Positions 3,346 to 28,873 of a stretch of 64,000 nucleotides of DNA are shown in pieces. The position numbers and the translations under genes are program-made. Origin of the DNA: Haliotis rubra (Eukaryota); the NCBI RefSeq assembly GCF_003918875.1, contig NW_025767000.1:992001-1056000 (forward strand), in the 5' to 3' direction. The stretch's first letter is position 1, and every line of letters begins with the position of its first letter. The notes below the pieces were generated by a model. That model saw only the letters and a list, made by a program, of their open reading frames with translations. It was not told where the DNA came from and did no database searches.

Positions 3346-3748
3346 ATGGATACAATATGTGAAGCCCACTTCTGGTTTCCCCCGCCTTGATATTGCTGGA
3401 ATATGGAATATTGCTTAAAGCGGCGTAAAACTAAACTCACTCACTCTATTGTCGTACTCAGGAGGCCCATGTTATATACGTACTTGGTGTGAGGCATCAA
3501 CAAAACAGTCTTAGTCTGGCGAAAAATGGAAATATTCACCCTATTTCCAAGAGCTTTAGAACAGGAATTTAGGAACATGAACCACTCATTCACTCTGTGA
3601 AACACGCACTCAACAGGCAAATGCGGTCGTTAGGGCATAAATTCTGTGGAACAATTCTCAGTTTATATTCGCAAAGTACGCAATGTTTTGATTCCGGTAA
3701 AAATTCTGCTTTTCAGTATCGTCCCAACAGACAACAGTCAGAAACACT

Positions 3749-6000
3749 ATGGCATCTGTGGAAGTAAGTGAAGACAACTCCGGATTTGTTGACAACTGGC
3801 AAAGTGGGAAGACCTTGGCGGAGTGTAACCTCCATATGTTGACCTCCGAGGATTCATGTGACGTCAGCTTCAGGGTTGGGAAAGAAGGGACGCCAGTCCG
3901 AGCTCACCGATATGTTCTGACGAGTCGGAGTTGTGTGTTCTACGCCATGTTGTGTGGCCCCCTGGCGGAGAAAGAGGACATCAAGATCCCAGATGTGGAG
4001 GAGGAACTATTCTCTGAAATGTTGAGGTATATGTATTGTAACTGTCATTATCACACACAGGATTTGGTCAGTTTCGTATAAACGCCTAGCTGGTTAACGC
4101 TAGAAATAAGTTGCAATTTAAGTCTTCTATTATGATACAACATTTTCTATCATTTGAAAACTGTTTTAATTCAAAATCAAAACTTGCTCTTCCCTGGGCT
4201 CACCTAACATTTATTGTGATTTTAGAGAACTAATTATGAATTGAATGAAGTGTAATGATCCCAGATGTGGAGGAGGAACTATTCTCTGAAATGTTGAGGC
4301 ATATATCTATGACGGTTAACTGTCCTTGTCATACATAAATGCCTACCTGGTAAAATATGCCATTTAATTCTTTTATTATGACGCAACATTTCTCAATCAT
4401 TTAATAAAAATATATTTTAATTTAAAATCAAAAGTTGCTCTCTCATGGTCGGTCATTCATGGTGATTTTAGAGATCTAATTATGAATGAGGTGGCAAAAG
4501 AGTTTGTGACAAGGGTATTTTTACAACAATAAGCACCATCGCTAATACAATACAAGGTCACCAGAAGTATAAGTATAATAACTCATCACATTACAAGTCC
4601 CCGCAGGACATTAACTAATTAATACAGTCAAAAACCGATATGTCGAGGTTAAAGAGGGGTTCGCAGGGTAAAGACTAAATTCTGGCTTTTACTTCGAGGC
4701 AACCAGAGGTCCGACACATCGGTGTTTTACTGCACTGTTAACAAACACCGGTCATGTGCTGGCTACCTTTAAGGGTTACATATATTGTAACGAAGATTTT
4801 AAGTTTATAAATTCATGAAGGTATGGTACGTCTAGTACCTTGTACCGATACATTACACGAAGATACAGTTTATACTAAAAGTCAAACTTTGCTCAAACAT
4901 TATACAAGGCCTAATTGTCATGAATATATATCACTTACAGGTACCTGTACACAGACACGACAACCGTGACTGCTGAGAATGTGACAGGTCTGTTGTACCT
5001 GGCCAAGAAGTACTCCGTGGGGGGTCTTGAGCGTCTGTGTGTGGCTTACCTGGAATCGTCCCTGACGGCAGAGAACGCCTGTGTCATCTTGGAACAAGCC
5101 CACGTCTTTGATGAGGAGAAGCTCTTTGACAGGGCTCTGGAGCTTGTTGTCAAACATTGTGGTACCACTGTTAAAAGCTCTGGCTTCACATCACTTTGTG
5201 CTTCTTGTTTTCATAAAGTTGTAAGCGCAGATTATTTCTTAACAAATGATGAAACAAGTTTCAATGCTGTCCTCTCGTGGGCCGAGTCAGAGTGTAAACG
5301 CCAAGGAAGGGAGATAACGCCGGAAAACAAACGTCTAGTTCTGGGAGAAGCAGTGTATAATATTTCCTTCACCTCCATGGACACCGAGATGTTTGCAAAA
5401 ACAGTTGTACCATCAGGGATATTATCAAGTGATGAAAGTAACAAACTGTTGTGCTACCTGATCTCAAATAATACTGATGTGGCTCCTTTCAAGATGAAGC
5501 CAGAGCTTCACATGGGGGTCAATCTGTATGCAAGTCAAATTCAATCAAGAACCAGTCAACAGGATTCTAGCAACTCATCCGGAACGAGTCGAGAGGATTC
5601 TAGCATCATCATCTCATGCAGCCAGGACATGCGCCTGACTGGTGTCTGGGCATATGGTGACGATAGCTGCATATATAACATTTCTCTAGACCAAGAAGAG
5701 TCACATACGAGTCAGTCTCACAATCTGAGATCGTATACTACTGTTAAGACCTGGGTTCAAAGAGAAGTATCAGCTGTGTTAGAGAGAAGTATTCCCAACA
5801 AGGTCCATCTGAAGCTGTCAGAGGTACTGATTCTAGAAAAATTACGCAGATATAGAATTGCAGTTACAAGAGAGTCAAATAAAAGTGGATTCTTGGGCTC
5901 CTCCGTATTCAATAATATCACACTTGGTGAATGCCAGATATCAGTTAAGGAAGGAAGTGGCCCGGGTCTCATTTCCAGTCTCATAATTGAGCATAAGTGA
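3749..6000 (+). CDS. BTB/POZ-BACK protein with divergent PHR-like C-terminus (BTBD1/2/3/6-like), copy A1; exons 3749-4026 and 4941-6000, ~445 aa
   Basis: Motifs DNWQ..CDVSFRVG..VRAHRYVL..SCVFYAMLCG and YLYTD..LYLAKKY. The GT-AG phase-2 intron joins in frame and the ORF is open to TGA at 5998-6000. Confidence 0.92.
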
Positions 6001-6840
6001 GACAACACACTGGCATGCATAGTGCTCCTCAAACAGTATACAGAACATGCTTGGGTAAAACTGTGATGAATGACTTGTCAACAACAACTACTCGGAAACG
6101 TTGAGAACAAATTTCAGAATGTCTTCACTATATAACAAATGCAAATTTGAGCTGCCAGGCTGTGTGAGATTACACATTAGCATGAGTATCTTCAGCACTG
6201 GAAAATACATTTAACGTCTTTGATATATTAAGACCGAAAAGTATGTGTCACGAAAATATATACTGTATATTTCAATTAGCATGGCCTGCCATCAGACAGC
6301 TTCCTCTTTAGCTGCCATCTTTGACACTATAAGGTCCCATCTTCAACGTCCTTTGTTTTGAAATGCTGTAATTGATTATTATTGTACCATAATGTCGCGG
6401 GTCCTGGCCGCTCATAAATCGGACTGAGGCGTAGTTGATTAAAATCTGTTTATTCTGTAAAATACATATATGGACATCAATGTAATATGATGTATGGCCG
6501 AGGGGTGTATCAACTCACCTCGGCCTTGGCGTGACATGAAGTGGCAAATATGAAGATGCCTACGTCACGGAACAGGTAATGCACGAGATGTCACGGAACA
6601 GGTAATGCACGAGATACTACTGGTATTACAACGAGAGTAAGAGTGATAGAAGAAGCGCTCGTAAATGAGCAGAGAGGAATAAAGTAAGAGATACGCAAAT
6701 GTATAGGGAAATACATCCGGCGACAATAATTCTACTATAATTCTTATTTATGTGCTGTATTAAGTGAGAATGTTTCTAGAATGTTATTTAATTGAATATA
6801 TATTGCATAAGTTTCTGTATATCAAATGCTTTTTCGCCAA

Positions 6841-6975
6841 GAGTGAGTGAGTGAGTGAGTTTAGTTTTACGCCGCTTTTAGCAATATTCCAGCAATATCA
6901 CGGCGGGGGACACCAGAAATGGGCTTCACACATTGTACCCATGTGGGGAATCGAACCCGGATCTTTGGCGTGACC
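6841..6975 (-). mobile_element. tRNA-derived SINE, family 1, 5'-truncated
   Basis: GGGTTCGATTCCCCACATGGGTACAATGTGTGAAGCCC..(ACTC)n on the minus strand. Confidence 0.85.
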
Positions 6976-7019
6976 CATTAGGTTGAACTGCCCCTTTTCG
7001 TCAAGAAATAGTGCTCTAT

Positions 7020-7143
7020 TCACCCTGAACCTTGTATAGTTGAGTTGAGTTGAGTTGGGTTTTACGTTGAGTTGAGTTGGGAATAATGCCGATGTGACGT
7101 AAAACCCACTCAACTCAACTCAACTATACAAGGTTCAGGGTGA
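7020..7143. repeat. Near-perfect ~47-bp inverted repeat around a SINE tail
   Basis: TCACCCTGAACCTTGTATAGTTGAG..TTTTACGT (7020-7067) versus ACGTAAAACCC..AAGGTTCAGGGTGA (7097-7143). Confidence 0.9.
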
Positions 7144-8583
7144 CCTGCAACGTCCCATAGTATATTGGAGGGATTCGTTTGACAATATCCGTAATAAACT
7201 ACACGCTTGCTATATCTATGGTAAGAATATGTGAACGATTCTTATTACTCCATTATCGCTTAAAACATTTCCATAACACAGTATCGAAGCCGATAATTAA
7301 TTTATCGTCTTATCACGCTTCTCCATGGTATCAAAAACCAAGCACATCACCTGAGGCCATGTGACTTGGAGGGGGTTAAGCACACTGACGTACAGCCAAC
7401 AGAGGTTATGTAATGAAACATGACTCAGTTAATACAGAGATGTCTGGAATGTAACAAAACCAGGAATTTTAACCCCAAAAAGGTTTCTTCTCCAGACTTA
7501 ACGCCGAAGACCCGGTTTCGATTTCCTACATGGTAACATTGCGTGAAGCCTATTTCTGGTGTCCCCCGCCGTGAAATTGCTTGAATATTGCTAAGAGCGG
7601 CGTAAAACTAAACTACGCTTGCTGACTCAGATCTACAGGAAGCAGATTATGATTCAGATCTCTCTTTAACTTATTAATGAATGGTCCATGTCAATATAGT
7701 ACTCAGTGTGTAGTTTTAAAGTTAAACACTGAGCAGTAAATGATTCTCTTTTAAAAAGTGGTGACTTTACTTTAACCATGGTGATTTTAAGTTGATTAAA
7801 TCCATGTTTCAGACCGCTGGCTTACTTGTTTTTTGAATTATGTAGATTTGAGGAATTTGCAATGATATTTTCATTTAATTTGATGTTGCTTAAAAAATTA
7901 TGCAGTCTTTGTTTTGTCAAGTAAATAGATGTATCATTAGTTCAACACTGATAACAGGTTGTTGGTTTTGTATATTTTGGAGATGACAATGTGATTTAAA
8001 TCACTCCATTCAAACAGTTAATTCAGAATTAATAGTGATATATCTCCAGCCTTTACCCTCAGTGACACTATGATGAGATTATTTGTGAACCTGATGTGCG
8101 TTCAAAGGTCATCTGCTTGAAGAAGTTGTGCATTTCAATAAAGCCCTTCAGTAATACCTTTTCTGCTTTTCTTTTATACATTTTTAATCGAATAATATTT
8201 GACAATGTTCATAGGACTGGTTGGTTTTCAGTGGGGCTGGTAGTTTTGATGGTAGTGAGTGAGTATGGTTTTACGACACTTCTAGCAATATTCCAGCAAT
8301 ATTTATCCACTGGAATCTCCCAACTGACTCACACATCGTACCCATGCGGGAATTCGAACCTGGGTCACCAGACCATCATGCTACCCCACCGCCCCTTATA
8401 CGCTGTGAGACCCAATGTGCAAAATTTTGGCGAGTTTTCGCACAATGCTTATTGTATGTCAAGAACTTGCAGATCTATGCAGTCTGATATTTAACGGCTC
8501 GACGAGAACCACAGTCGCGGATGATAATCATATTAATATTATAGACTATTCTGATCACCGATCCCGCCTAGCCCATATTTTCA

Positions 8584-8636
8584 GTCACGTGACAGACAGT
8601 CAGAGTTCGACATTGCGCTCAATACCACAGGTAAGA
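8584..8636 (+). promoter_or_regulatory. Putative promoter and non-coding first exon of B1: GTCACGTGAC E-box followed by a splice donor
   Basis: GC box CCCGCC at ~8563, GTCACGTGAC at 8584-8593, CAG/GTAAGA at 8630/8631, and acceptor CCTTCAG at 10097 just before the ATG. Confidence 0.55.
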
Positions 8637-9379
8637 CGGTTTGTCATGGTACTTGTTGTTGACACATGTATAATTGAGGTAAACACCACAAAATCTGATG
8701 AGGTGTTCCAGTACATGTGTTTTGTGGAATGTGAATAAGTACCTCCCCCCTCTCATCCAAACCCCCAATCTTCTTCGTAAATAGACTTTAGCCAGTAAAA
8801 GCTACCTGCACAGACAAGTGCAGTGACAGGTTCTCCCCTCGCACTGCGACACGTGGGGAAAACCACGAACACACTGACACGTGTAATTCAGTGTGGTGGA
8901 TGTCGGATAAGTCGACATACTCACATCAGTAAATATCAGTTATTTGAATGCAACAACTAGTTCTCATGAAATACGTGAATGACAATAACAAGTCATCATT
9001 CTTTCCGGTTTGTAATGTCAATGAACATTATGCGAGTTGTCATGGATATCCTACGAACGGAAACATGTAGATATCACGTACATGATATACGTTTCCATAC
9101 AGATGTAAGTACAGATACACATACTGATAACACACATTTTTCATATGATATTGATTATAACAACAAAAATACACCATGTGTATCGCTTGGATGCGGAAGT
9201 AAACAATGTACAGGGGAGATATCTCGTGCTGACCCAGCTGGGTATTTTCATACAGCTTCTGCCGACAGTGCAAGCTTTCGTTAATATCAGAACGTGTATA
9301 TAAAGTTGTACTGAATCCACCATGAAGCAAAGACAGTGCCTGTTTTCAAATTACATTTAAACACCCCTGTGTCGCTCAT

Positions 9380-9545
9380 GGAGTGAGTGGGTGAGTGAGT
9401 TTAGTTTTACGCCGCTTTCAGTAATATTCCAGCAATATCACGACGGGAACACCAGAAATGGGCTTCACACGTTGTACCCATGTGGGGAATCGAACCCGGG
9501 GATTCGGCGTGACGAGCGAACGCTATAACCACTAGGCTACCCCAC
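9380..9545 (-). mobile_element. tRNA-derived SINE, family 1
   Basis: A-box TAGCCTAGTGG, B-box GGTTCGATTCC and ACTC tail on the minus strand. Confidence 0.85.
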
Positions 9546-10456
9546 ATGAACGGAAGCGAAGAAACGTTCGATGCATTTTACGGATTTAGAGTAATCCCAA
9601 ATAAAACACAATCAAACAGATTAATATTCGAGTGACAATCAGTAAAGCATATTGGACGCTTAAACTAGCAATATCGTGTTTAGTTATTGGTAAAAAAGAA
9701 GACAATGGCTTCGTATTATATTATTTTTTTGTTAAATGGTAAATTATATAACATACCTATACTCATAACATAGATTATCTTTCACGTGGCTGAAATATGC
9801 GTGACTGAATGAGATTGAGATGCCCATGAATGGCAGAAGGAAAGTGCAATGTCGACATTTCATACATGCATTTGATAAAGATGGAATCGTTCAATGGTGA
9901 TTTCCTAATGTTCTTTTTGTTGTTTTTATTGTCCCCAAGACACACAGTCTTATGGGTTTCACCGATGTTGTAAATATCACGATTCGATTTTTCACAGATC
10001 GCCTTGTTTTCATATTTCTAATTGCGGCTTTAAACAACGTTCGTTCAGTCGGCTGAGTTGACGTCAGCAAGATCTTCAAAGGGTGCCATTCCTTCAGATA
10101 GCAACTGCAAACATCAATGGCCTCAATAGAAGTAAGAGAAGACAACTCTGTGTTCGATGACAACTGGCAAAGTGGGAAGTCCCTTGCAGAGTGTAACCTC
10201 CATATGTTGACCTCTGAGGATTCTTGTGACGTCAGCTTCCGGGTTGGGAATAATGAGAGGATAGTCTGAGCCCACCGATATGTTCTGATGAGTCGGAGTA
10301 GTGTGCTCCACGCCATGTTGTGTGGCCTCCTGGCGGAGAAAGAGGAAATTAGGATACCTGATGTAGAGGAAGAAATATTTAATGACATGTTGAGGTAGGT
10401 GATGGTCAGTGTTGTGCTTTGTTCGTCTTGTAGACGGTGTCTAAAAGTCCTTCGGG

Positions 10457-10700
10457 TCCATGAGGATCCGGGTTAGAATTGGTCTTCAGCAACCCATGCT
10501 TGTCGTAAGAGGCGACTAACGGGATCGGGTGGTCAGGCTCGCTGACTTGGTTGACACATGTCATCGCATCCCACTTGCGTAATGATCGATGCTCATGCTG
10601 TTGATCACTGGATTGTCTGGTCCAGACTCGATTATTTATAGACCGCCGTCATATAGCTGGAATATTGCTGAGTGTGGCTTTAAACAACCAAACCAAACCA
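10457..10700 (+). mobile_element. SINE-like family 2 (head ACCCGTGAAGATCCGGG, no recognisable tRNA head)
   Basis: GCTTGTCGTAAGAGGCGACTAA hairpin and tail GCTGGAATATTGCTGAGTG..AAACAA; more than 10 copies in the window. Confidence 0.8.
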
Positions 10701-10971
10701 AAAGCCCGTCGGTGCTTCGGGATGCCCACACACTGATACTGATAAAACTGAAATATTGCTGTAAACATTCACTCACTCACCTTGGTTGAAAAAGACAAAA
10801 AATATCTGTCAGTTTATTCAGTTCAAATCTCTAACACAATTAAGGCATCAAGAATTCAGAATAATAGCCATCAACCTCTACCAGTTAAAGTGGACTACCA
10901 GCATTTGAATGCAGCATTTTACTGTCTCGGACTAGCAGACTAGCGTGCATTTTGCATTCACGTCCTCGTTA

Positions 10972-11217
10972 TGAGTGAGTGAGTTTAGTTTTACGCCGCA
11001 CCCAGCAATATTCCAGCTCTGTAGCGGCGGTCTGTAAATAATCAGATCTGGACCAGACAATCCAGGGATCAACAGCGTGAACATCAATCTACGCAATTGG
11101 GATACGATGACATGTGTCAACCCAGTCAGCGAGCCTGACCACCCGATCCCATTAGACGCCTCTTACGACAAGCAAGGGTTACTGAAGATCAATTCTAACC
11201 CTGATCTTCACGGGTCT
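10972..11217 (-). mobile_element. SINE-like family 2, inverted relative to the 10457 copy in the same intron
   Basis: Reverse complement of the family consensus. Confidence 0.8.
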
Positions 11218-12494
11218 CCTTGTTATGAACAGTGAGTGTGTTTATTACAACGTCACTTTGAACAGAATGTCTAGATGCAAGGGCGTGTCAGCCTCATATG
11301 GGAGGAAAACCCCAAACTTCCCAGGTCGATCGCCAGTGCAATGAATATACTGTAATACATTTCCTGCCATAAACGTTCATTTTGTGAAAAAAACCCTGCT
11401 TTCTCCACTTGTATTTATTACTGTACATAGTCCTTACTGAAATTTCCCGATGTAAAATACATATATATTTGCAGATTTCTGTATACAGACACGACAACCC
11501 TGACTGCTGAGAATGTGACAGGTCTGTTGTATCTGGCCAAGAAATACGCCGTGGGGGGTCTAGAGCGTCTATGTGTGGCTTACCTGGAATCGTCCCTGAC
11601 GGCAGAGAACGCTTGTGTCATTCTGGAACAAGCCCACGTCTTTGATGAGGAAACACTGTTTGATAGGGCCTTGAAGGTCATTGTTCAGAATGGAGATGTT
11701 GCACTAGAGAGCTATAGCTTCAAAGATCTGTGTCAAACGTGTTTCCAAAACATTGTCAGTGCAGTTAGTGGAGAGGAGTATATTGTAAAACCGGAAAAAA
11801 TGTTTGGTTCTGCCATCTTGTGGGCTGAGGAAGAAATAAAGCGAAGGGAATTGGAAAGCACTCCAGAAAACAAGCGACAAGTTCTTGGGGAGTCAGTGTA
11901 TGAGCTTGGCTTCACATCAATGGGGATACAGGAATTTGCCAAAACGGTAGTTCAATCTGGAATATTATCAGGCGATGAATGTACAAAATTATTCTGTTTC
12001 TTATGTATATCTGGGACCGACGCAGCACCATTCAAAGTAAGTCCAGGACCTGCAGTCTCTTTGTATGGAAACAGGATCCGCACTGATCTCAGCGAGTTGG
12101 ATTCATACATCACCATCACGTGTAGCCATAACATGCGTTTGATCGGCCTTTGGGCATTTGGTAGCGACAACAGCAGGTATAACATAGTGCTGGATAGGAA
12201 ACAGGGAACTCCACGGCGTTGGATTGATCAGATGAGGATGTCAGCAAAGCCTGTGAGAACTGATGGGACAGAAGTGGAACTGGAACTGTCAGCACAGCCT
12301 ACTCTAGAGGCCAACGTTAATTACAGGTTCCGGACTCACATGAGCAATACTACAGGGGGATGGCTAGGTACTCAACTTAGGAAAGGCATCACTGTTGGCA
12401 AATGTCAGATATCCGTTTCACAGGCATACGAAGATGGCATCATCTCCAGACTCGTATTGCGGTTATGTGAGTTGGGTTAGCGTCATCACCAGTC

Positions 12495-12720
12495 TTTGAC
12501 GCGCCATAACGTTTAAACTGCTTTTAACGCTGATATATTGTAGGTTTGCTGGATAAAATTCAGACTTTGAAAATGAGGATCTGTGTGGGTACACATCAGC
12601 AGCCTTTGACACGCTATTTCGGTTAAAGTTCTTTTAACGCGGTGCGAGATATGTTGTAGCTTTGTTAGATACAGTTTAGATTTTGAAAATGGGAATGTGT
12701 GTGGATAAGATGTTTGACCT
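12495..12720. repeat. ~110-bp tandem duplication just 3' of the B1 stop (also present after B2 and B3)
   Basis: TTTGAC(G/A)CGC..TTTTAACGC..TTTGAAAATG occurs twice. Confidence 0.75.
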
Positions 12721-12765
12721 TGCTCATTAATTGTTTGATCGACATTCTTGAAGTTGGTGAGTCAA

Positions 12766-13152
12766 TAATGAAGCATACAACTTTATAGATAACAACTTCT
12801 TGTTCATTACATAGAGCACTATTAGCTTGATAATGGTGTAAGAGTGAGTGAGTGAGTTTAGGTTTACGCCGCACTCAGCAATATTCCAGCTATATCGGCG
12901 GTCTGTGAATAATCGAGTCTGGATCAGACAATCCAGTGATCAATAGCATGAGTATCCTTAAGCAATGGGAACCGATGACATGTGTCAACCAAGTCAGCGA
13001 GCCTAACGACCCGATCCTGTTAGTCGCCTCTTACGACACACATGGGTTACAGAAGATCAACTCTGTCCCGGATCTTCACGGGTAAAATGGTGTATGAATC
13101 TACATCGAAACGTCGCTCTAAGTAATAAACAAGAAGTTGTATGCTTCATTTT
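12766..13152 (+). mobile_element. Penelope-like pLTR fold-back remnant with a split hammerhead; family 2 SINE inserted at 12843-13084 (-)
   Basis: TTGATAA (12827) ..[SINE, TSD AATGGTGTA(A/T)GA].. ACATC GAAA CGTC (13102-13114), then AATAAACAAGAAGTTG; an inverted copy of this tail lies at 12766-12817. Confidence 0.7.
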
Positions 13153-15879: not shown

Positions 15880-16378
15880 ATTATTATGGATATACAAATT
15901 CTTGTATTCTGTGGAGGCGACGTTTCGACATAGATTTTAATGTCGTTGTCAAGCAAGTGATACATGAGTAACAAATTGAGAGAAAATATACATTAGTTGT
16001 TATTACAGTAGATAGGGAATGAGTTGTTTATACAATAAATGAGGTGAGATTGAGTAAGTTGATTGGATGCCAGAAGGGTGATACACAAGGACTGAATTAG
16101 AACTTATAAAACTGATAGGAAGCCAGGTGGATGTATATACGATGGATGGGGTTGATGTACATAGTTGAATTGAAAAATATAATGTACACAAGAAATATTA
16201 TTGATTACTTTATCAAGTGATGGTAGGCATTGGGAATGTAGTATCCTTCATCTCTGTTGAGGGCGGATCCTATCTTCTTGACGTGTACTGCTTCCAAAAG
16301 TTTACGAATTTTGTAGTCTGACTGGTTCTTTTCTATGGTTTTATTTGAATTATGATATTGTGTGACAAATGTGTATTG
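15880..16378 (-). mobile_element. Penelope-like element 3' end: GIY-YIG C-terminus plus pLTR
   Basis: YKIRKLLEAVHVKKIGSALNRDEG matches the PLE endonuclease tail; a hammerhead-like motif lies in the downstream pLTR. Confidence 0.8.
15916..15955 (-). ncRNA. Minimal type I hammerhead ribozyme, U3-A8 core variant
   Basis: GC-UUGACAA-C-GACAU-(8 nt)-AUGUC-GAAA-C-GUC-GC. Confidence 0.65.
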
Positions 16379-19300
16379 ATGGAATATAAACATCTCTCAG
16401 TATTCCTTGATGGGATATAAACATCTCGCAGTATTCCTTGATGGGATATAAACAACTCTCAGTATTCCTTGATGGGTTATAAACATCTCTCAGTATTCCT
16501 TGATGGGATATAAACATCTCTCAGTATTCCTTGATGGGATATAAACATCTCTCAGTATTCCTTGATGGGATATAAACATCTCTCAGTATTCCTTGATGGG
16601 ATATAAACACCACTGAGTATTCCTTGATAGGATAAAACATCTCTCAGCATTCCTTGATGGGATATAAACATCTCTCGGTATTCCTTGATGGGATATAAAC
16701 ATCTCTCAGTATTCCTTGATAGGATAAAACATCTCTCAGCATTCCTTGATGGGATACAAACATCTCTCAGTATTCCGTGATGGGATATAGATATCTTTCA
16801 GTATTCCGTGATGGAAAATAAACATCTCTCAGTATTCCGTGATGGGATATAAACATCTCTCAGTATTCCTTGATGGGATATAAACATCTCTCAGTATTCC
16901 TTGATGGGATATAAACATTTCTCAGTATTCCTTGATAGGATATAAACATCTCTCAGTATTCCTTGATGGGATATAAACAACTCTCAGTATTCCTTGATGG
17001 GTTATAAACATCTCTCAGTATTCCTTGATGGGATATAAACATCTCTCAGTATTCCTTGGTGGGATATAAACATCTCTCAGTATTCCTTGATGGGATATAA
17101 ACATCTCTCAGTATTCCTTGATGGGATATAAACATCTCTCAGTATTCCTTGATGGGATATAAACATCTCTCAGTATTCCTTGATGGGATATAAACATCTC
17201 TCAGTATTCCTTGATGGGATATAAACATCTCTCAGTATTCCTTGATGGGATATAAACATTTCTCAGTATTCCGTGACGGGATATAAACATTTCTCAGTAT
17301 TCCTTGATGGGATATAGATATCTCTCAGTATTCCGGGTCGGAATATAGATATCTTTCAGTATTCCGTGATGGAAAATAAACATCTCTCAGTAGTCCGTGA
17401 TGGAATATAAACATCTCTCGGTATTCCTTGATGAGATATAAATGTTTTATGCTATCAAGGAATACTGAGAGATGTTTATATCCCATCAAGGAATACCGAG
17501 AGATGTTTATATCCCATCCAGGAATGCTGAGAGATGTTTTTTTCCTATCAAGGAATACTCAGTGGTGTTTATATCCCATCAAGGAATACTGAGAGATGTT
17601 TATATCCCATCAAGGACTACTGAGAGATGTTTATATCCCATCAAGGAATACTGAGAGATGTTTATAACCCATCAAGGAATACTGAGAGTTGTTTATATCC
17701 CATCAAGGAATACTGCGAGATGTTTATATCCCATTAAGGAATACTGAGAGATGTTTATATTCCATCAATACACATTTGTCACACAATATCATAATTCAAA
17801 TAAAACCATAGAAAAGAACCAGTCAGACTACAAAATTCGTAAACTTTTGGAAGCAGTACACGTCAAGAAGATAGGATCCGCCCTCAACAGAGATGAAGGA
17901 TACTACATTCCCAATTTTAGAAAATGATTTTTTTATTTTGAATAAAACACTCCATACATAATATTAGCATAATATACACTGTAAAGTAGTCAGACATGTA
18001 AGACTGTTTGACCTGTTTGATATTCTGTGACTATACTAAACGAACTAAAACCACCAGTGAATAGTTCAGTTTATGTCTGTTTAGCGTCCTTCCTTCAAAT
18101 ATGTTAGAACTTATTTAGAAGAAGGGTTCTCTTTGAATACCCACCAAGTTATTATATCCCAATACTAAGAAATGGGTTATATCCCATCACGTAATGCTAA
18201 AAGATATATTATCCCATCACGGAATACTGGGAGATATTCATATCCCATCTCGGAATACTGAAACATATACATGTAGATATGAATATATATCTCATTACTG
18301 AGATATAACTGAGAGACTTCTTTATCCCATCACGGAATATAGATATCTCTCAGTATTCCGTGATGGAAAATAAACATCTCTCAGTATTCCGTGATGGAAA
18401 ATAAACATCTCTCAGTATTCCGTGATGGAAAATAAACATCTCTCAGTATTCCTTGATGGGATATAAACATTTCTCAGTATTCCGTGACGGGATATAGATA
18501 TCTCTCAATATTCCGTGACGGGATATAGATATCTTTCAGTATTCCTTGATGGAAAATAAACATCTCTCAGTAGTCCGTGATGGGATATATACATCTTTTA
18601 GTGTTCCGTGATGGGATATAGAGTCTCTCAGTTATATCTCAGTAATGAGATGTATATTCATATCTACATGTATATGTTTCAGTATACCGAGATGGGATAT
18701 AAACATCTCTCAGTATTCCTTGATGGGATAAAAACATCTCTCTGTATTCCTTGATGGGATATAAACATCTCTCAGTATTCCTTGATGGGATATAAACATT
18801 TCTCAGTATTCCGTGACGGGATATAGATATCTCTCAATATTCCGTGATGGGATATAGATATCTCTCAGTATTCCGTGATGGAAAATAAACATCTCTCAGT
18901 ATTCCGTGATGGAAAATAAACATCTCTCAGTATTCCTTGATGGGATATAAACATTTCTCAGTATTCCGTGATGGGATATAGATATCTCTCAATATTCCGT
19001 GATGGGATATAGACATCTTTCAGTATTCCTTGATGGATAAATAAACATCTCTCAGTAGTCCGTCTCAGTATATATACATCTTTTAGTGTTCCGTGATGGG
19101 ATATAGAAGTCTCTCAGTTATATCTCAGTAATGAGATGTATATTCATATCTACATGTATATGTTTCAGTATACCGAGATGGGATATAAACATCTCTCAGT
19201 ATTCCTTGATGGGATAAAAACATCTCTCTGTATTCCTTGATGGGATATAAACATCTCTCAGTATTCCTTGATGGGATATAAACATTTCTCAGTATTCCGT

Positions 19301-19705
19301 GACGGGATATAGATATCTCTCAATATTCCGTGACGGGATATAGATATCTCTCAGTATTCCGTGATGGAAAATAAACATCTCTCAGTATTCCGTGATGGGA
19401 AATAAACATCTCTCAGTATTCCTTGATGGGATATAAACATTTCTCAGTATTCCGTGACGGGATATAGATATCTCTCAATATTCCGTGACGGGATATAGAT
19501 ATCTTTCAGTATTCCGTGATGGAAAATAAACATCTCTCAGTAGTCCGTGATGGGATATATACATCTTTTAGTGTTCCGTGATGGGATATAGAAGTCTCTC
19601 AGTTATATCTCAGTAATGAGATGTATATTCATATCTACATGTATATGTTTCAGTATTCCGAGATGGGATATGAATATCTCCTAGTATTCCGTGATGGGAT
19701 ATAAC
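16376..19705. repeat. 31-bp minisatellite (GGGATATAAACATCTCTCAGTATTCCTTGAT) with orientation switches and a ~485-bp higher-order repeat
   Basis: Forward 16376-17440, reverse 17442-17765 and ~18170-18337, forward 18337-19705. A marker segment recurs at 18631, 19117 and 19602. Confidence 0.95.
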
Positions 19706-20265
19706 CCATTTCTTAGTATTGGGATATAATAACTTGGTGGGTATTCAAAGAGAACCCTTCTTCTAAATAAGTTCTAACATATTTGAAGGAAGGACGCTAA
19801 ACAGACATAAACTGAACTATTCACTGGTGGTTTTAGTTCGTTTAGTATAGTCACAGAATATCAAACAGGTCAAACAGTCTTACATGTCTGACTACTTTAC
19901 AGTGTATATTATGCTAATATTATGTATGGAGTGTTTTATTCAAAATAAAAAAAATCATTTTCTAAACTCACGCATTTATTAAACAAACCAGACTTATTTC
20001 CGCCCAACCAGCAGATCAGCGGCAAAATATGTCGTGTGAAGTAATTCTTTACGAACTACACCATGTTATGTGGCAGGCTTATCTAGCTGATTGCTATAAT
20101 TATTTGTAAGTTGGTGTATTGTGCATTTGAAAGTTAAACCTCCTCCACCACCACCATCCACCTTAAAACCCAAACCACAACAATATACAACTCTCCCCCT
20201 CCTTAAAACCACAACAACCATACAACACACACACACACGAAACAAAATAGGAAACAATAATAATA

Positions 20266-22654: not shown

Positions 22655-22993
22655 TTGTCGTACTTAGGAGGCCCATGTAATATACGTACTTGGTGTGAAG
22701 CATCAACAAAACAGTCTTAGTCTTGGGAAAAGTGGAAATATTCACCCCATTTCCAAGAATTTTACATGAACTTGGGAACATGAACCACTCATTTACTTTG
22801 GACATGGGGTGTTTTTTGTAGCATAATAGAATTGTTAGCTATGTGAAACACGCACTCAACTGGCAAATGCGGTCTTTAGGGCTTAAATTCTGTTGAATAA
22901 TTCTGAGTTTATATTCGAGAAGGACACACTGTTTTGATTCCGATAAAATTCTGCATTTTAGAATCGCCCCAACAGACAGCATTCAGGAACAGT

Positions 22994-25013
22994 ATGGCCT
23001 CTGTGGAAGTAAGTGGAGACAACTCCGGATTTGTTGACAACTGGCAAAGTGGGAAGACCTTGGCGGAGTGTAATCTCCACATGTTGACCTCTGAGGATTC
23101 TTGTGACGTCAGCTTCCTGGTTGGGAAAGAAGGGATGCCAGTCCGAGCTCACCGATATGTTCTGATGAGTCGGAGTTGTGTGTTCTACGCCATGTTGTGT
23201 GGCCCCCTGGCGGAGAAAGAGGACATCAAGATCCCCGATGTGGAGGAGGAACTATTCTCTGAAATGTTGAGGTATATATCCCTATGGCGGTTAGGTATTG
23301 TTTACATTATTGGTCATACCTGCATAATAGGGTTAACTGTCATTGTCATACATAAAAGTCTAGTTGGTTAAATATGCCTTATAATTCTTTTATTATGATA
23401 CAACATTTCTCTATCCTTTCATCAAAATATATTTTAATTTAAAATCAAAAGTTGCTCTTTCTTGGTCATTCATGGTGACTTTAGAGATCTAATTATGAAT
23501 AAGGTGGCAAAAGAGTTTGTGACAAGGGTATTTTTACAACAATAAGCACCATCGCTAATACAATACAAGGTCACCAGAAGTATAAGTATAATAACTCATC
23601 AGATTACAAATCCCCGCAGGACATTAACTAATTAATACAGTCAAAAACCGATATGTCGAGGTTAAAGAGGGGTTCGCAGGGTAAAGACTAAATTCTGGCT
23701 TTTACTTCGAGGCAACCAGAGGTCCAACACATCGATGTTTTACTGCACTGTTAACAAACATCGGTCATGTGCTGGCTACCTTTAAGGGTTACATATATTG
23801 TAACGAAGATTTTAAGTTGATAAATTCATGAAGGTATGGCACGTCTAGTACCTTGTACCGAAACATTACACGAAGATACAGTTTATACTAAAAGTCAAAC
23901 TTTGCTCAAACATTGTACAAGGCCTAATTGTCATGAATACATATCATTTACAGGTACCTGTACACAGACAAGACAACCCTGACTGCTGAGAATGTGACAG
24001 GTCTGTTGTACCTGGCCAAGAAGTACTCCGTGGGGGGTCTTGAGCGTCTGTGTGTGGCTTACCTGGAATCGTCCCTGACGGTAGATAACGCCTGTGTCAT
24101 CTTGGAACAAGCCCATGTCTTTGATGAGGAGAAGCTCTTTGACAGGGCCCTGGAGGTTGTTGTCAAACATGGTGGTACCACTGTTAAAAGCTCTGGCTTC
24201 ACATCACTTTGTGCTTCTTGTTTTCATAAAGTTGTAAGCGCAGATTATTTCTTAACAAATGATGAAACAAGTTTCAATGCTGTCCTCTCGTGGGCCGAGT
24301 CAGAGTGTAAACGCCAAGGAAGGGAGATAAGTCCGGAAAACAAACGTCTAGTTCTGGGAGAAGCAGTGTATAATATTGCCTTCACCTCCATGGACACGAA
24401 GATGTTTGCAGAAACAGTTGTACCGTCAGGGATATTATCAAGTGATGAAAGTAACAAACTGTTGTGCTACCTGATCTTAAATGTTACTGATGTGGCTCCT
24501 TTCAAAATGAAGCCAGAGCTTCACATGGGGGTCAATCTGTATGCAAGTCAAATTCAATCAAGAACCAGTCAACAGGATTCTAGCAACTCATCCGGAACCA
24601 TTCGAGAGGATTCTAGCATCATCATCTCATGCAGCCAGGGCATGCACCTGACTGGTGTCTGGGTATATGGTGACAGCAGCTGCATATATAACATTTCTCT
24701 ATATCAAGAAGAGTCACATAGGAGTCAGTCTCAGAATATGAGATCGTGTACTACTGTTAAGACCTGGGTTCTAAGAGAAGTATCAGCTGTGTTAGAGAGA
24801 AGTATTCCCAACGAGGTCCATCTGAAGCTGTCGGAGGTATTGATTCTAGAAAAGTCATCCAGATATAAAATTGAAATTACAAGAGAGTCAAATAAAAGTG
24901 GATTCTTGGGCTCCTCCGTATTCAATAATATCACACTTGGTGAATGCCAGATATCAGTTAAGGAAGAACGTGGCCCGGGTCTTATTTCCAGACTCATAAT
25001 GGAGGAAATATGA
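22994..25013 (+). CDS. BTB-BACK-(PHR-like) copy A2; exons 22994-23271 and 23954-25013, ~445 aa
   Basis: Same exon lengths (278 and 1060 nt) and splice sites as A1; reading frame open. Confidence 0.92.
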
Positions 25014-26591
25014 GACAACACACTGGCATGTAAAGAGCTCCTCAAACAGTATACAGAACATGTGTACATACTGTTCCACTTCCTTGGGTAAAACAGTGAT
25101 GGATGACCTGTCAACAACAACTACTCGGAAACGTTGACAACAAATTTCAGAATGTCTTCACTATATAACAAATGAAAATTTGAGCTGCCAGGCTGTGTGA
25201 GATTACACAATAAAATGAGTATCTTCAGCACTGGAAAATACATTTAACTTCTTTGATATATTAAGACCAAAAAGTATGTGTCACGAAAATATATACTGTA
25301 TATTCCAATTAGCATGGCCTGCCATCAGACAGCTTCCTCTTTAGCTGCCATCTTGGACACTGTAAGGTCCCATCTTCAACGTCCTTTGTTTTGAAATGCT
25401 GTACTTAATTATTATTCTACCATAATGTCGAGGGTCCTGGCCGCTTATAAATAGGACTGAGGCGTACTTGATTAAAATTTGTTTATTCTTTAAAATACAT
25501 ATATGGACATCAATATAATATGATATATGGCCGAGGGGTGTATCAACTCACCTCGGCCGTGGCGTGACATGAAGTGGCAAATATGAAGATGCCTATGTCG
25601 GGGAACAGGTAATGCACGAGATGTCAAGGAACAGGTAATGCACGAGATACTACTGGTATTACAACCAGAATCCATGTTTCAGACCGCTGGCTTACTTTTT
25701 TTTGAATTATGTAGATTTGAGGAATTTGCAATGATATTTTCATTCAATTTGATGTTGCTTAAAAAATTATGCAGTTTTTGTTTTGTAAAGTAAATAGATG
25801 TATCATTAGTTCAACACTGACAGCAGGTTGTTGGTTTTGTATATTTTGGAGATGACAATGTGATTTAAATCATTCCATTCAAACAGTTAATTCAGAATTA
25901 ATAGTGATATATCTCCAGCCTTTACCCTCAGTGACACTATGATGAGATTATTTGTGAACCTGATGTGCATTCAAAGGTCATCTGCTTGAAGAAGTTGTGC
26001 ATTATAAAGCCCTTCAGTAATACCTTTTCTGCTTTTCTTTTATAATTTTTTAATCGAATAATATTTTACAATGTTCATAGGACTGGTTGGTTATCAGTGG
26101 GGCTGGTAGTTTTTATGGTAGTGGGTGAGTATGGTTTTGCGACGCTTTTAGCAATATTCCAGCAATATTTATCCACTGGAATCTCCCAACTGACTCACAC
26201 ATCCTACCCATGCGGGAATTCGAACCTGGGTCATCAGACCATCAGGCTACCCCACCGCCCCTTATACGCTGTCAGACCCATGATACAAAATTTTGGCGAG
26301 TTTTTGCACAATGCTTATTGTATGTCAAGAACTTGCAGATCTATGCAGTCTGATATTTAACGGCTTGCAAAATCTCCGAAATGATTGTTTATGTGGAATT
26401 GATAGATTATATTAACTTCGAACTATATAACCCCCCCCACCCCCCACCCCCACACATCCCAACACACACAGACGCACGCACGCACGCACGCACACAGAAC
26501 GTATAATGTCGACGAGAACTACAGTCTGATGATAAGCACAATAATATTATAGACTATTCTGATCACCGATCCCGCCTCGCACATATTTTCA

Positions 26592-26644
26592 GTCACGTGA
26601 CAGACGGTCAGAGTTCAACATTGCGCTCAATACCACAGGTAAGA
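26592..26644 (+). promoter_or_regulatory. Putative promoter and first exon of B2
   Basis: GTCACGTGAC at 26592-26601 and donor CAG/GTAAGA at 26638/26639. Confidence 0.55.
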
Positions 26645-27971
26645 CGGTTTGTCATGTTACTTGTTGTTGACACATGTATATTTGAGGTAAACACCACAAA
26701 ATCTTATGAGGGGTTCCAGTACATGTGTTTCGTGGAATGTGAATAAGTACCTCCCCCCTCTCATCCATTCCCCCAATCTTCTTCGTAAATAGACTGTAGC
26801 CAGTAAAAGCTACCTGCACGGACAAGTGCAGTGACAGGTTCTCCCCTCGCACTGCGACACGTGGGGAAAACCACGAACACACTGACACGTGTAATTCAGT
26901 GTGGTGGATGTCGGATCAGTCGACATACTCACATCAGTAAATATCAGTTATTTGAATACGACAACTAGTTCTCATGAAATACGTGAATGACAATAACAAG
27001 TCATCATTCTTTCCGGTTTGTAATGTCAATGAACATTATGCGAGTTGTCATGGATATCCTGCGAACGGAAACATGTAGATATCAAGTACATGATATACGT
27101 CTCCATACAGATGTAAGTACAGATACACATACTGATTAGACACATTTCTCATATGATATTGATTATAACTACAAAAATACACCATGTGTATCGCTTGTAT
27201 CGCTTGGACGCGGAAGTAAACAATGTACAGGGGAGATAACTCGTGCTGACCCAGCTGGGTATTTTCATACAGCTTCTGCCGACAGTGCAAGCTTTCGTTA
27301 ATATCAGAACGCGTATATAAAGTTGTACTGAATCCACCATGAAGCAAAGTCAGTGCCTGTTTTCAAATTACATTTAAACACCCCTGTGTCGCTCATGGAG
27401 TGAGTGGGTGAGTGAGTTTAGTTTTACGCCGCTTTCAGTAATATTCCAGCAATATCACGACGGTAATCCCAAGTAAAACACAATCAAACAGATTAATATT
27501 CGAGTGAGAAATCAGTAAAGCATATTGGACGCTTAAACTAGCAATATCGTGTTTAGTTATTGGTAAAAAAGAAGACAATGGCTTCGTATTATATTTTTTT
27601 TGGTTAAATGGTAAATTTTATAACACACCTATACTCATAACATAGATTATCTTTCACGTGGCTGAAATATGCGTGACTGAATGAGATTGAGATGCCCATG
27701 AATGGCAGAAGGAAAGTGCAATGTCGACATTTCATACATGCATTTGATAAAGATGGAATCGTTCAATGGTGATTTCCTAATGTTCTTTTTGTTGTTTTTA
27801 TTGTCCCCAAGACGCTCAGATGTTGTAAATATCACGATTCGATTTTTCACAGATCGCCTTGTTTTCATATTACTAATTGCGGCTATAAACAACGTTCGTT
27901 CAGTCGGCTGAGTTGACGTCAGCAAGATCTTCAAAGGGTGTCATTCCTTCAGATAGCAACTGCAAACATCG

Positions 27972-28839
27972 ATGGCCTCAATAGAAGTAAGAGAAGACAA
28001 CTCTGTGTTCGATGACAACTGGCAAAGTGGGAAGTCCCTTGCAGAGTGTAACCTCCATATGTTGACCTCTGAGGATTCTTGTGACGTCAGCTTCCGGGTT
28101 GGGAATAATGAGAGGATAGTCTGAGCCCACCGATATGTTCTGATGAGTCGGAGTAGTGTGCTCCACGCCATGTTGTGTGGCCCCCTGGCGGAGAAAGAGG
28201 AAATAAGGATACCTGATGTAGAGGAAGAAATATTTAATGACATGTTGAGGTAGGTGATGGTCAGTGTTGTGCTTTGTTCGTCTTGTAGACGGTGTCTAAA
28301 AGTCCCTCGGGTCCATGAGGATCCGGGTTAGGCGACTAACGGGATCGGGTGGTCAGGGCACCGTCTGGCTCGCTGACTTGGTTGACACACGTCATCGCAT
28401 CCCAATGACTGAGATTGATACTCATGATGTTGATCACTGGATTGTCTGGCCCAGACTACATTATATACAGGCCGCTGTTATATAGTTGAAATATTGTTGA
28501 GTGTGGCGTTAAACAACAACCAAACCAAACCACACGTCCCTCGAAGCTTCGGTTTCCCACACACTGACACCACATGATAAAACTGAAATCTGCTGTAAAC
28601 ATTCACTCACTCACCTTGGTTGAAAGAGACAAAAAATATCTGTCAGTTTATTCAGTTTCAATCTGTAACAAAATTAAGGAATCGAGAATTCAGAATTATA
28701 GCCATCAACCTCTACCAGTGAGCGAGGACTACCAGCATTTTTAATTCAGGATTTTACTGTCTCGGACTAGCGGACTAGCGTGCATTTTGCATTCACGTTC
28801 ACGTTATGAGTGAGTGAGTTTAGTTCTCAGCCATATTCC

Positions 28840-28873
<34 letters not shown>

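What the first reader, a model, noticed from the sequence alone, without database searches (positions are those of the whole stretch)
5461..6000. C-terminal PHR-like domain of A1/A2 diversifies at amino-acid level
Manual count over the last ~179 codons: about 25 amino-acid differences versus about 6 silent-only codons, several being multi-nucleotide changes. The N-terminal ~266 codons show about 14 versus 10. Established: expanded BTB and F-box adaptors in nematodes and plants show positive selection in substrate-binding domains and are proposed to act as pathogen-targeting E3 adaptors. Inference: a candidate molluscan variable-receptor Cul3 immune system.
Basis: partly seen in the sequence, partly recalled or inferred. 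Interest (0 to 1): 0.75.

Follow-up and report, generated by a model that had tools for sequence, protein, structure and literature searches.

The report
Abalone BTB paralogues: fast-evolving PHR domain
Two recently duplicated neighbouring abalone genes for likely ubiquitin-ligase adaptors keep their scaffold half conserved while their target-binding half changes at about the neutral rate; only one small hairpin looks selected for change across the gene family, so this is a typical fast-turnover adaptor family and not a demonstrated immune receptor system.

Summary
The replacement rate is three times higher in the C-terminal part (p=3e-4) at equal dS. But omega there is 0.97 (NG86) or 1.19 (ML on the A1 and A2 tip branches), no different from 1. 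The changes hit conserved and variable positions alike, and strands and loops alike.

The genes are Haliotis rubra "BTBD6-like" BTB-BACK-PHR proteins. PHR identity is confirmed by family profile and by fold (Z about 15.5), not by Pfam. They belong to a tandem family with at least 65 exon-2 matches in the genome.

Across 12 clade members from four abalone species, site models support omega of about 2.3-3 for 8-13% of sites. Nearly all of these lie in one length-variable beta-hairpin (A1 residues about 347-366) plus residues 394-395. Without the hairpin no signal remains, and the signal is sensitive to strict alignment trimming.

The neighbouring B1/B2 pair, copied in the same event, keeps its PHR domain conserved. 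An immune role is untested. BTBD6 expansions are already reported in vent snails.

The parts
3749..4026 (+). A1 exon 1 (codons 1-92 plus 2 nt): first part of the BTB domain
   Evidence: ORF and GT donor at 4027. Pfam BTB E=1.6e-9. RNA-type contig joint 4024->4939 GT..AG.
4027..4940 (+). A1 intron (914 nt; A2's is 682 nt)
   Evidence: GT..AG. RNA-like runs X4 and X7 have zero depth here, and X4 spans the joint. Shared part K=0.048 between A1 and A2.
4941..5460 (+). A1 exon 2, N part: end of BTB, BACK, and linker helices (codons 93-266)
   Evidence: Pfam BTB and BACK. Omega 0.39-0.44, below 1. A1/A2 replacements avoid invariant sites: 1/142 vs 13/124, p=4e-4.
5461..6000 (+). The finding: A1 codons 267-445 plus stop. 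The PHR beta-sandwich spans about 5509-5997.
   Evidence: 25 vs 6 codon differences, omega 0.97. PHR by family profile and by fold, Z 15.4-15.7. AF2 pLDDT 85.5, 12 strands.
5701..5760 (+). Hypervariable, length-variable beta-hairpin of the PHR domain (A1 residues 347-366; strands 337-351 and 358-367, tip 352-357)
   Evidence: NEB/M8 sites 347, 349-353, 355, 357-359, 361, 366. Loop length varies by 0-24 residues among paralogues. A1/A2 here: 5 replacements, 0 silent.
5800..5865 (+). Second hairpin (residues 380-401; tip 392-395), carrying a dense cluster of A1-private changes. Sites 394/395 fall in the omega>1 class.
   Evidence: No donor copy in the genome: the best non-self hit is A2 at 90%. 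The A1 states at 5800, 5841, 5843 and 5855 were seen in none of 4 read sets.
5953..5997 (+). Last loop and strand of PHR (residues 431-445): A1 lost the residues E431, R432, R439 and M442, which are conserved across the clade
22994..23271 (+). A2 exon 1
   Evidence: NCBI XP_046576050.1/51.1.
23954..25013 (+). A2 exon 2 (PHR-coding part 24474-25013)
   Evidence: Pfam BTB and BACK.
3593..12808 (.). First copy of the two-gene (A-B) segmental duplication. Its partner is 22839-30536, at 94-96.5% identity.
   Evidence: Self-BLAST, repeat families D4-D13, non-coding K 0.022-0.054.
11475..12480 (+). B1 exon 2 (partner B2 is 29208-30213): internal control of the same age, with a conserved PHR domain
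   Evidence: B1/B2 PHR part: 4 replacements per 364 sites vs 12 silent per 110 sites, ratio 0.10.

Best explanation
A1 and A2 are young tandem paralogues. They arose from a duplication of a two-gene A-B unit within a lineage-specifically expanded BTB-BACK-PHR ('BTBD6-like') family of Haliotis rubra. By homology these proteins are Cul3 substrate adaptors: BTB-BACK docks on cullin-3 and dimerises, and the C-terminal PHR beta-sandwich binds the target (inferred, not shown).

Since the duplication, the BTB-BACK half has stayed under the family's usual purifying selection (omega about 0.4). Most of the PHR domain has drifted at about the neutral rate in both copies, somewhat faster in A1. This is relaxed constraint on a redundant target-binding module in a birth-and-death gene cluster.

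On top of that, one protruding beta-hairpin that varies in length (A1 residues about 347-366), and perhaps the tip of a second hairpin (394-395), is recurrently replaced across the clade faster than silent sites. This is the only part for which diversifying selection on specificity is indicated. It accounts for 7 of the 25 A1/A2 replacements.
For: Shown:
- Exact counts and omega by domain.
- dN is three times higher in PHR at equal dS.
- ML tip-branch omega is 0.44 in the N part (below 1, p=0.044) and 1.19 in the C part (not different from 1, p=0.67; not different from the background 0.74, p=0.25).
- Replacements avoid invariant sites in BTB-BACK but not in PHR.
- Both lineages contribute: 15 A1-derived and 11 A2-derived non-synonymous changes; 18 vs 10 with the third copy as outgroup.
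- Clade M0 omega is 0.41 (N part) vs 0.76 (C part; omega=1 rejected, p=0.005).
- M1a/M2a 2dlnL is 32.8, M7/M8 46.6, M8a/M8 32.2. Of the 21 candidate sites, 19 lie in PHR, concentrated at 347-366 and 394-395.
- PHR alone on its own tree still gives p=4e-5. PHR minus the hairpin gives p=0.32, with 65% of sites at omega=1.
- In the close pair P4/P7 the hairpin has 13/51 replacements against 10/345 in the rest of PHR (p=3e-7).
- My M0 likelihoods equal iqtree2's exactly.
- The control pair B1/B2, of the same age, keeps its PHR conserved, with a ratio of 0.10.
- The cluster holds decayed copies: A4, A7psi, B3, and the B pair with a shared stop.
- Domains are established.
Against: - Omega near 1 over a domain can also come from a mix of constrained and positively selected sites, and the pair has too few changes to separate these.
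- dN of the PHR part (0.074) exceeds the non-coding divergence of the duplicated segment (0.038, p=0.003; adjacent intron and flank 0.049, p=0.08). This would favour selection, except that dS exceeds it too.
- The hairpin signal sits beside indels, disappears under strict trimming, and could be inflated by misalignment or by exchange between paralogues. P4/P7 have dS 0.14 in BTB-BACK but 0.02 in PHR.
- Branch lengths were held proportional in the site models.
- 3D clustering could not be tested because no model coordinates were available.
- Expression of A1 and A2 individually is not shown.
Confidence: 0.55

Rival explanations
1. The whole PHR domain of A1/A2 is under diversifying selection as a variable recognition module of a Cul3-based system that targets pathogen proteins, analogous to the nematode MATH-BTB and F-box adaptors.
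For: - The family is tandemly expanded, with at least 65 exon-2 matches in the genome and 11 loci within about 160 kb.
- PHR is the fast half in nearly every close pair.
- Site models give omega 2.3-3 for 8-13% of sites, almost all in PHR.
- Most radical A1/A2 changes affect polar residues, while the few changes at hydrophobic positions are conservative (A330V, V401I, I442M, L355M).
- dN in PHR is at or above local non-coding divergence.
- One paper lists BTBD6 among 'immunity-related' expanded families in a vent snail (PMC7895826).
Against: - Omega for the pair is not above 1.
- The signal is confined to one hairpin and absent from the other 164 PHR columns.
- Replacements hit invariant sites as often as variable ones and show no loop enrichment.
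- The neighbouring B pair of the same family is conserved.
- There are no data on induction, pathogen binding or Cul3 binding.
- The other paper reads the same expansion as neural (PMC7736800).
Confidence: 0.2
2. One copy, most likely A1, is functionally dying or silent, and its PHR domain is decaying. The pair's pattern is then early pseudogenisation rather than anything adaptive.
For: - A1 carries private changes at positions conserved in the whole clade and partly in B (K380, A400, G431, S432, S439, I442).
- The A1 lineage has 18 private changes against 10 in A2.
- A1-private states at 5470, 5800, 5841, 5843, 5855 and 5979 were absent from all four read sets, including the two RNA-type ones.
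- The cluster is rich in decayed copies.
Against: - Both reading frames are intact over 445 codons.
- BTB-BACK replacements avoid invariant sites, and omega is 0.44 on the tip branches. A dead gene would not show this unless death was very recent.
- A2 also changed invariant residues (R324H, A330V).
- The 18 vs 10 difference is not significant.
- Contigs cannot prove absence.
Confidence: 0.15
3. This is an artefact. A1 and A2 would be two divergent haplotypes of a single locus laid in tandem by the assembler, or part of the A1-private cluster would be consensus error. The 'paralogue divergence' would then be allelic variation or noise.
For: - Identity of about 95% is within the range of divergent haplotypes in marine molluscs (own knowledge).
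- A satellite array (16.2-20 kb) lies between the copies.
- The best DNA run holds only 49% of A1's exon-2 words.
- Several A1 states are unseen in reads.
Against: - The duplicated block has sharp edges at 3593/22839. There is no match upstream, and the downstream context differs (B3 and a flank copy at 37-41 kb).
- Intron lengths differ by 232 nt.
- A third, equidistant copy exists 76 kb away.
- DNA run X1 holds an exact A1-specific contig (5597-5771, 0 differences across 10 A1/A2-diagnostic sites) as well as an A2-type contig.
- The differences are substitutions, not the indels typical of long-read consensus error.
- NCBI annotates two loci.
Confidence: 0.08

Closest known systems
Vertebrate BTBD1/BTBD2/BTBD3/BTBD6 (BTB-BACK-PHR proteins; BTBD6 is a Cul3 adaptor in neurogenesis)
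   Same: - Same three-domain order.
- The best solved BTB match is human BTBD6 (2VKP, E=1.9e-20).
- The PHR fold matches human BTBD2 PHR (3NO8, Z 15.4).
- NCBI names both genes 'BTBD6-like'.
   Different: - Vertebrates have a few conserved single-copy genes. Here there is a tandem family with at least 65 exon-2 matches and pseudogenes.
- The PHR domain has diverged so far that Pfam PF08005 no longer detects it in the A clade.
- Abalone proteins of other species reach at most 65% identity to A1/A2.
BTBD6 expansions in deep-sea vent snails (Chrysomallon 56 copies, Gigantopelta 35; PMC7736800, PMC7895826)
   Same: - Same gastropod family; Gigantopelta proteins are the nearest non-abalone hits.
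- Tandem clusters.
- Read in those papers as either neural or immune.
   Different: - Those papers report copy number only.
[quoted passage not shown]
- Here a shallow-water abalone also has a large family, and the domain-specific rate pattern and hypervariable hairpin are described. No paper in the searchable library mentions BTBD6 in abalone.
Nematode MATH-BTB (BATH) and nematode/plant F-box adaptor families with positively selected substrate-binding domains (Thomas 2006, Genome Research; cited from my own knowledge)
   Same: - Lineage-specific tandem expansion with birth-and-death turnover.
- The cullin-docking domain is conserved, while the substrate-binding domain evolves fast, with omega>1 at a subset of sites.
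   Different: - The recognition domain is PHR rather than MATH or FTH.
- The selected sites are confined to one hairpin, and the evidence is sensitive to alignment.
- Most of the domain looks neutral rather than adaptively driven.
- No link to pathogens.
PHR domains of MYCBP2/Highwire/RPM-1
   Same: Same beta-sandwich fold (3GBW Z 15.7, 3HWJ Z 15.6).
   Different: Those are tandem domains inside a giant RING ligase, highly conserved and not expanded.

Membership tests
BTB-BACK-PHR proteins (BTBD1/2/3/6 type) | N-terminal BTB/POZ domain | tested here: met
   PF00651 E=3e-21, residues 31-133 of A1. Human BTBD6 BTB 2VKP E=1.9e-20.
BTB-BACK-PHR proteins (BTBD1/2/3/6 type) | BACK domain after BTB | tested here: met
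   PF07707 E=9e-7, residues 140-213. A2: E=2.5e-6.
BTB-BACK-PHR proteins (BTBD1/2/3/6 type) | C-terminal PHR domain recognised by the Pfam model PF08005 | tested here: not met
   No PF08005 hit in A1 even at E<=10. The model hits the paralogues P0018 (1.5e-7) and P0020 (2.6e-19), and weakly P0013 (0.049).
BTB-BACK-PHR proteins (BTBD1/2/3/6 type) | C-terminal PHR beta-sandwich fold or homology | tested here: met
   - A family profile that includes A1 hits 3NO8 at 3.2e-14 and 3GBW at 1e-11.
- hhalign of the A clade against PHR-bearing relatives gives E=1e-4 over 153 columns, probability 58%.
- The AF2 model (pLDDT 85.5) gives Foldseek probability 1.0 for its top four PDB hits (3 PHR entries: 3HWJ chains A/B, 3GBW, 3NO8).
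- VIA gives Z 15.4-15.7, with the next best at 6.6.
Cul3 substrate adaptors | phi-x-E motif in the BTB alpha3-beta4 loop, plus 3-box/BACK helices | tested here: met
   L72-A73-E74 aligns with SPOP M-E-E and BTBD6 L-A-E and is at least 90% conserved in 14 family members. The motif's role in Cul3 binding is from my own knowledge of the SPOP and KLHL-Cul3 structures.
Cul3 substrate adaptors | Physical binding to cullin-3 and ubiquitylation of a bound substrate | not tested
   Needs co-IP or reconstitution. A complex prediction was not attempted, because abalone Cul3 would have had to be assembled from exons.
Adaptively evolving adaptor repertoires (MATH-BTB / F-box type) | Lineage-specific tandem expansion with turnover | tested here: met
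   At least 65 exon-2 matches in the genome; 11 loci at 871-1030 kb of the contig. Decayed copies: A4, A7psi, B3, and B1/B2 with a shared TGA.
Adaptively evolving adaptor repertoires (MATH-BTB / F-box type) | Omega>1 in the substrate-binding domain | tested here: inconclusive
   Clade level: M1a/M2a p=8e-8, M7/M8 p=7e-11, and PHR alone p=4e-5. But strict trimming gives p=0.25 and removing the hairpin gives p=0.32. A1/A2 pair: omega 0.97-1.19, not above 1.
Adaptively evolving adaptor repertoires (MATH-BTB / F-box type) | Selected sites cluster on a binding surface | tested here: inconclusive
   The sites cluster in sequence on one hairpin and one hairpin tip (with strands). A1/A2 differences as a whole are not enriched in loops. 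3D mapping was impossible because model coordinates are not exposed.
Adaptively evolving adaptor repertoires (MATH-BTB / F-box type) | Role in immunity / pathogen-derived substrates | not testable with these tools
   No challenge data were reachable. The RNA-type runs only show that an A-type gene is spliced and expressed in a related organism.

The most novel reading that the evidence does not exclude
The length-variable PHR hairpin (A1 residues 347-366), together with the neighbouring hairpin tip (394-395), would be the specificity-determining loop of a large, rapidly turning-over repertoire of Cul3 adaptors in gastropods. Its diversification would be driven by non-self targets (viral or bacterial proteins). 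This would be a PHR-based counterpart of the nematode MATH-BTB system, with A1/A2 caught just after duplication while acquiring new specificities.
Probability: 0.12. Interest if true: 0.7.

Novelty: new member of a known kind. Interest (0 to 1): 0.35.

Why it matters
If the hairpin signal holds, it identifies the part of the little-studied PHR domain that sets target specificity in BTBD-type adaptors. It also gives a concrete handle (hairpin swaps between paralogues) for finding what an expanded molluscan E3-adaptor family recognises.

The result also shows that BTBD6-like expansion is not peculiar to hydrothermal-vent snails, which weakens the 'vent adaptation' reading in the literature.

As it stands, it is an ordinary example of a known pattern: a conserved cullin-docking half and a fast target-binding half in a birth-and-death family. 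It has a useful internal control in the conserved B1/B2 pair, which was duplicated in the same event.

Tried and rejected
- **Pfam PHR on A1/A2:** no hit even at E<=10. The question was settled by profile and fold instead.
- **Gene conversion as the source of the clustered changes:**
  - A 17-mer scan against 39 other loci and the rest of the window found no donor.
  - A whole-genome BLAST of 5780-5880 also found none for A1's 5800-5863 cluster; the best non-self hit is A2 at 90%.
  - A2's 5069-5143 patch shares some states with A5 but is not a clean tract.
- **Multi-nucleotide codons as evidence of selection:** rejected. The clustering is significant (P=0.007-0.012), but non-coding blocks show similar neighbouring changes.
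- **Intergenic divergence as the neutral yardstick:** rejected, because dS also exceeds it (p=0.02).
- **Loop enrichment of A1/A2 changes:** none.
- **Pooled pairwise N:S in the hairpin against neutrality:** not significant (p=0.13), because there are too few silent sites.
- **Technical failures:**
  - Running all five site models in one script timed out.
  - iqtree thread errors occurred.
- **Literature:**
  - No paper on BTBD6 in abalone.
  - Three searches were unproductive.
- **Reads:**
  - Only Logan contigs were available, so depth, copy number and paralogue-specific expression could not be measured.
  - A1-private states were not seen, which proves nothing.
- **Not attempted:** Cul3 complex prediction, a full-length fold, and the large representative-protein search. 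The family was already identified, so the large search was not needed.
- **Spliced protein:**
  - It was never typed or sent joined to a search.
  - Exons were searched by reference.
  - The database's own record P0001 was used after that.
  - Joined CDSs were built only inside scripts from stored files, for codon counting.
Full report
**Setting.** The window is Haliotis rubra contig C2110:992001-1056000.

ORF listing and self-comparison show a two-gene unit, A then B, present twice:
- A1 (3749-6000) and B1 (10117-12480) lie in block 3593-12808.
- A2 (22994-25013) and B2 (27972-30213) lie in block 22839-30536.
- The blocks are 94-96.5% identical and are separated by transposon remnants and a 31-nt satellite. 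A partial B3 lies at about 37.2 kb.

Each gene has two exons joined by a GT-AG intron that splits codon 93. The A1 product equals NCBI XP_046576052.1. A2 is XP_046576050.1/51.1. [quoted passage not shown]

The spliced protein was never typed or sent joined to a search. Exons were searched by reference, and afterwards the database's own record P0001 was used. Joined coding sequences were built only inside scripts from stored files, for codon counting.

**The observation.** It is confirmed exactly.
- Codons 267-445 differ at 25 amino-acid positions and 6 silent-only codons.
- Codons 1-266 differ at 14 and 10.
- Six C-terminal codons carry two or three nucleotide changes.

Nei-Gojobori estimates are:

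| Part | dN | dS | omega |
|---|---|---|---|
| N (codons 1-266) | 0.025 | 0.064 | 0.39 |
| C (codons 267-445) | 0.074 | 0.076 | 0.97 |

The replacement rate differs threefold between the halves (Fisher p=3e-4) while dS does not (p=0.81). So the contrast is real. However, the C-terminal ratio of replacement to silent changes is exactly the neutral expectation (p=0.54 for an excess). The N-terminal half lies below neutral (p=0.02).

**What the domain is.**
- Pfam finds BTB (E=3e-21) and BACK (E=9e-7) but no PHR in A1, even at E<=10.
- More distant paralogues, aligned over 95% of the query, do carry PF08005.
- A profile of 34 family C-termini that includes A1 hits the solved PHR domains of human BTBD2 (3NO8, 3e-14) and mouse MYCBP2 (3GBW, 1e-11).
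- hhalign of the A clade against PHR-bearing relatives gives E=1e-4 over 153 columns.
- An AlphaFold2 model of A1 residues 262-445 (pLDDT 85.5, twelve strands) aligns to 3GBW, 3HWJ and 3NO8 at Z 15.4-15.7, with the next fold at 6.6.

So 'PHR-like' is right.

The BTB domain is closest to human BTBD6 (2VKP). It keeps L72-A73-E74 where SPOP has its M-E-E Cul3-contact motif (the motif's role is from my own knowledge). Cul3 binding itself is inferred, not shown.

**Is the pair under positive selection?**
- Polarising with the other A-clade genes shows that both lineages changed: 15 A1-derived and 11 A2-derived non-synonymous nucleotides in the C part.
- A third, decayed A1/A2-like copy 76 kb away (A7psi) gives 18 A1-private and 10 A2-private changes.
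- A maximum-likelihood two-ratio model on a 12-gene clade gives omega 0.44 on the A1 and A2 tips in BTB-BACK. This is below 1 (p=0.044) and equal to the background.
- The same model gives omega 1.19 in PHR. This is not different from 1 (p=0.67) nor from the background of 0.74 (p=0.25).
- Against ten relatives, A1/A2 replacements avoid invariant positions in BTB-BACK (1/142 vs 13/124, p=4e-4) but not in PHR (4/39 vs 21/140, p=0.6).
- By the model's secondary structure, 14 of 25 replacements lie in strands, against 59% expected (p=0.84).
- The differences are more clustered than random (P about 0.01), but so are those in non-coding blocks.
- dN of PHR exceeds the non-coding divergence of the duplicated segment (p=0.003). 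But dS does too (p=0.02), so that yardstick is unsafe.

Because BTB-BACK is still constrained, the genes have not simply been dead since duplication.

**An internal control.** B1 and B2 were copied in the same event and have a similar dS. Their PHR part has 4 replacements per 364 sites against 12 silent per 110 sites, a ratio of 0.10. The high replacement rate is therefore specific to the A pair's PHR domain and is not regional.

**The clade and the family.** The genome holds at least 65 exon-2 matches. Eleven of these lie within 871-1030 kb of this contig. Most distant copies align only over BTB-BACK.

I assembled full coding sequences for A1, A2, A3, A5 and A6, and for seven genes of H. cracherodii, H. 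rufescens and H. asinina. Trees of the two halves are congruent.

I wrote GY94/F3x4 likelihood code for the analysis. Its M0 likelihoods and tree lengths equal those of iqtree2 exactly.

Results:
- M0 omega is 0.41 in BTB-BACK and 0.76 in PHR; omega=1 is rejected for PHR (p=0.005).
- M1a vs M2a: 2dlnL 32.8 (p=8e-8), with 7.5% of sites at omega 2.9.
- M7 vs M8: 46.6. M8a vs M8: 32.2, with omega 2.3 for 13.5% of sites.
- Nineteen of the 21 candidate sites are in PHR. They concentrate at A1 residues 347-366 and 394-395, with a few at 292-298 and 445.
- In the model, 337-351 and 358-367 are the two long strands of a hairpin whose tip (352-357) varies by 0-24 residues among paralogues.
- In the close pair H. 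cracherodii P4 / H. rufescens P7 the hairpin has 13 replacements in 51 sites, against 10 in 345 for the rest of PHR (p=3e-7). These arise by point substitutions, not frameshifts.

Robustness:
- PHR alone on its own tree keeps the signal (p=4e-5).
- Gap-free columns keep it (p=8e-4).
- Dropping columns within three of a gap removes it (p=0.25).
- Dropping the hairpin removes it (p=0.32). What remains is 35% of sites at omega 0.2 and 65% at omega 1.

So diversifying selection is indicated only for the hairpin. Caveats are alignment next to indels, possible exchange between paralogues (P4/P7 have dS 0.14 in BTB-BACK and 0.02 in PHR), and branch lengths held proportional. The rest of the domain looks two-thirds neutral. 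Seven of the 25 A1/A2 replacements (349, 353, 355, 358, 366, 394, 395) fall at these sites.

**Reads.** Only assembled contigs of public runs were available.
- Two RNA-type runs of a related organism cover the exons and not the intron or the 5' flank.
- One spans the predicted junction (4024->4939, GT..AG).
- So an A-type gene about 97-98% identical to A1 is spliced and expressed there.
- A DNA run of the best-holding organism contains an exact A1-specific contig over the hairpin (5597-5771) and an A2-type contig elsewhere. This is consistent with both copies existing.
- A1-private bases at 5470, 5800, 5841, 5843, 5855 and 5979 were seen in none of the four runs. Contigs cannot prove absence, so these bases need a raw-read check.

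**Literature.**
- BTBD6 expansion (56 and 35 copies) is reported for two vent snails and read as neural (PMC7736800).
- It is listed among immunity-related expanded families in PMC7895826.
- It is cited as a vent adaptation in a 2025 preprint.
- Nothing in the library mentions it in abalone.
- The precedent of positively selected substrate-binding domains in nematode MATH-BTB and F-box families is from my own knowledge (Thomas 2006).

**Verdict.**
- The best reading (confidence about 0.55) is a young paralogue pair in a birth-and-death Cul3-adaptor family. Its PHR target-binding domain drifts at about the neutral rate while BTB-BACK stays constrained, and clade-level diversifying selection is confined to one hypervariable hairpin.
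- Rivals: PHR-wide diversifying selection for pathogen recognition (0.2), early decay of A1 (0.15), and a haplotype or assembly artefact (0.08).
- It is a new member of a known kind, of moderate interest.

Noticed in passing
window 11475-12480 and 29208-30213 (B1/B2), stop at 10267-10269: B1 and B2 share an in-frame TGA at codon 51. Even so, their PHR part shows 4 replacements against 12 silent changes (ratio 0.10). That is much stronger conservation than in the intact A pair, which was copied in the same event.
   Followed up: partly
L041:3457-4683 (G000:C2110 about 920.5-921.7 kb): A third A1/A2-like copy (A7psi) is 95% identical to A1 over 4862-5579. It lacks the equivalent of A1 5580-5866 (the PHR core) and has no exon 1 nearby. 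It is roughly equidistant from A1 and A2.
   Followed up: partly
L004 / L040 (G000:C2110 about 984 kb): Copy A4 has a TGA nine codons before the usual end. No exon-1-like sequence lies within 5.4 kb upstream. NCBI models it as a 350-aa 'uncharacterized protein' (P0003).
   Followed up: partly
window 3593-3748 vs 22839-22993: The 156 nt just upstream of the start codons differ by 13.5%, three to four times the rest of the duplicated block. This could be promoter or 5'UTR divergence, or the ragged edge of the duplication.
   Followed up: no
window 4033-4313: A1's intron carries about 230-280 nt that are absent from A2. DNA contigs of two runs show the joined form 4032->4314.
   Followed up: no
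window about 5554-5598: A Ser/Gln-rich insertion of about 10 residues, specific to A1/A2, sits in a low-confidence loop of the PHR model. Contigs of a related organism (one DNA-type, one RNA-type) skip 33 nt here (5553->5587), so the insertion varies in length.
   Followed up: no
L031 and L033 (H. cracherodii P0004, H. rufescens P0007): This presumed orthologue pair has dS 0.142 in BTB-BACK but 0.019 in PHR. That mosaic history points to exchange between paralogues in one half of the gene.
   Followed up: no
window 16229-19966: A large 31-nt satellite array with long inverted arms separates the two copies of the A-B duplication.
   Followed up: no
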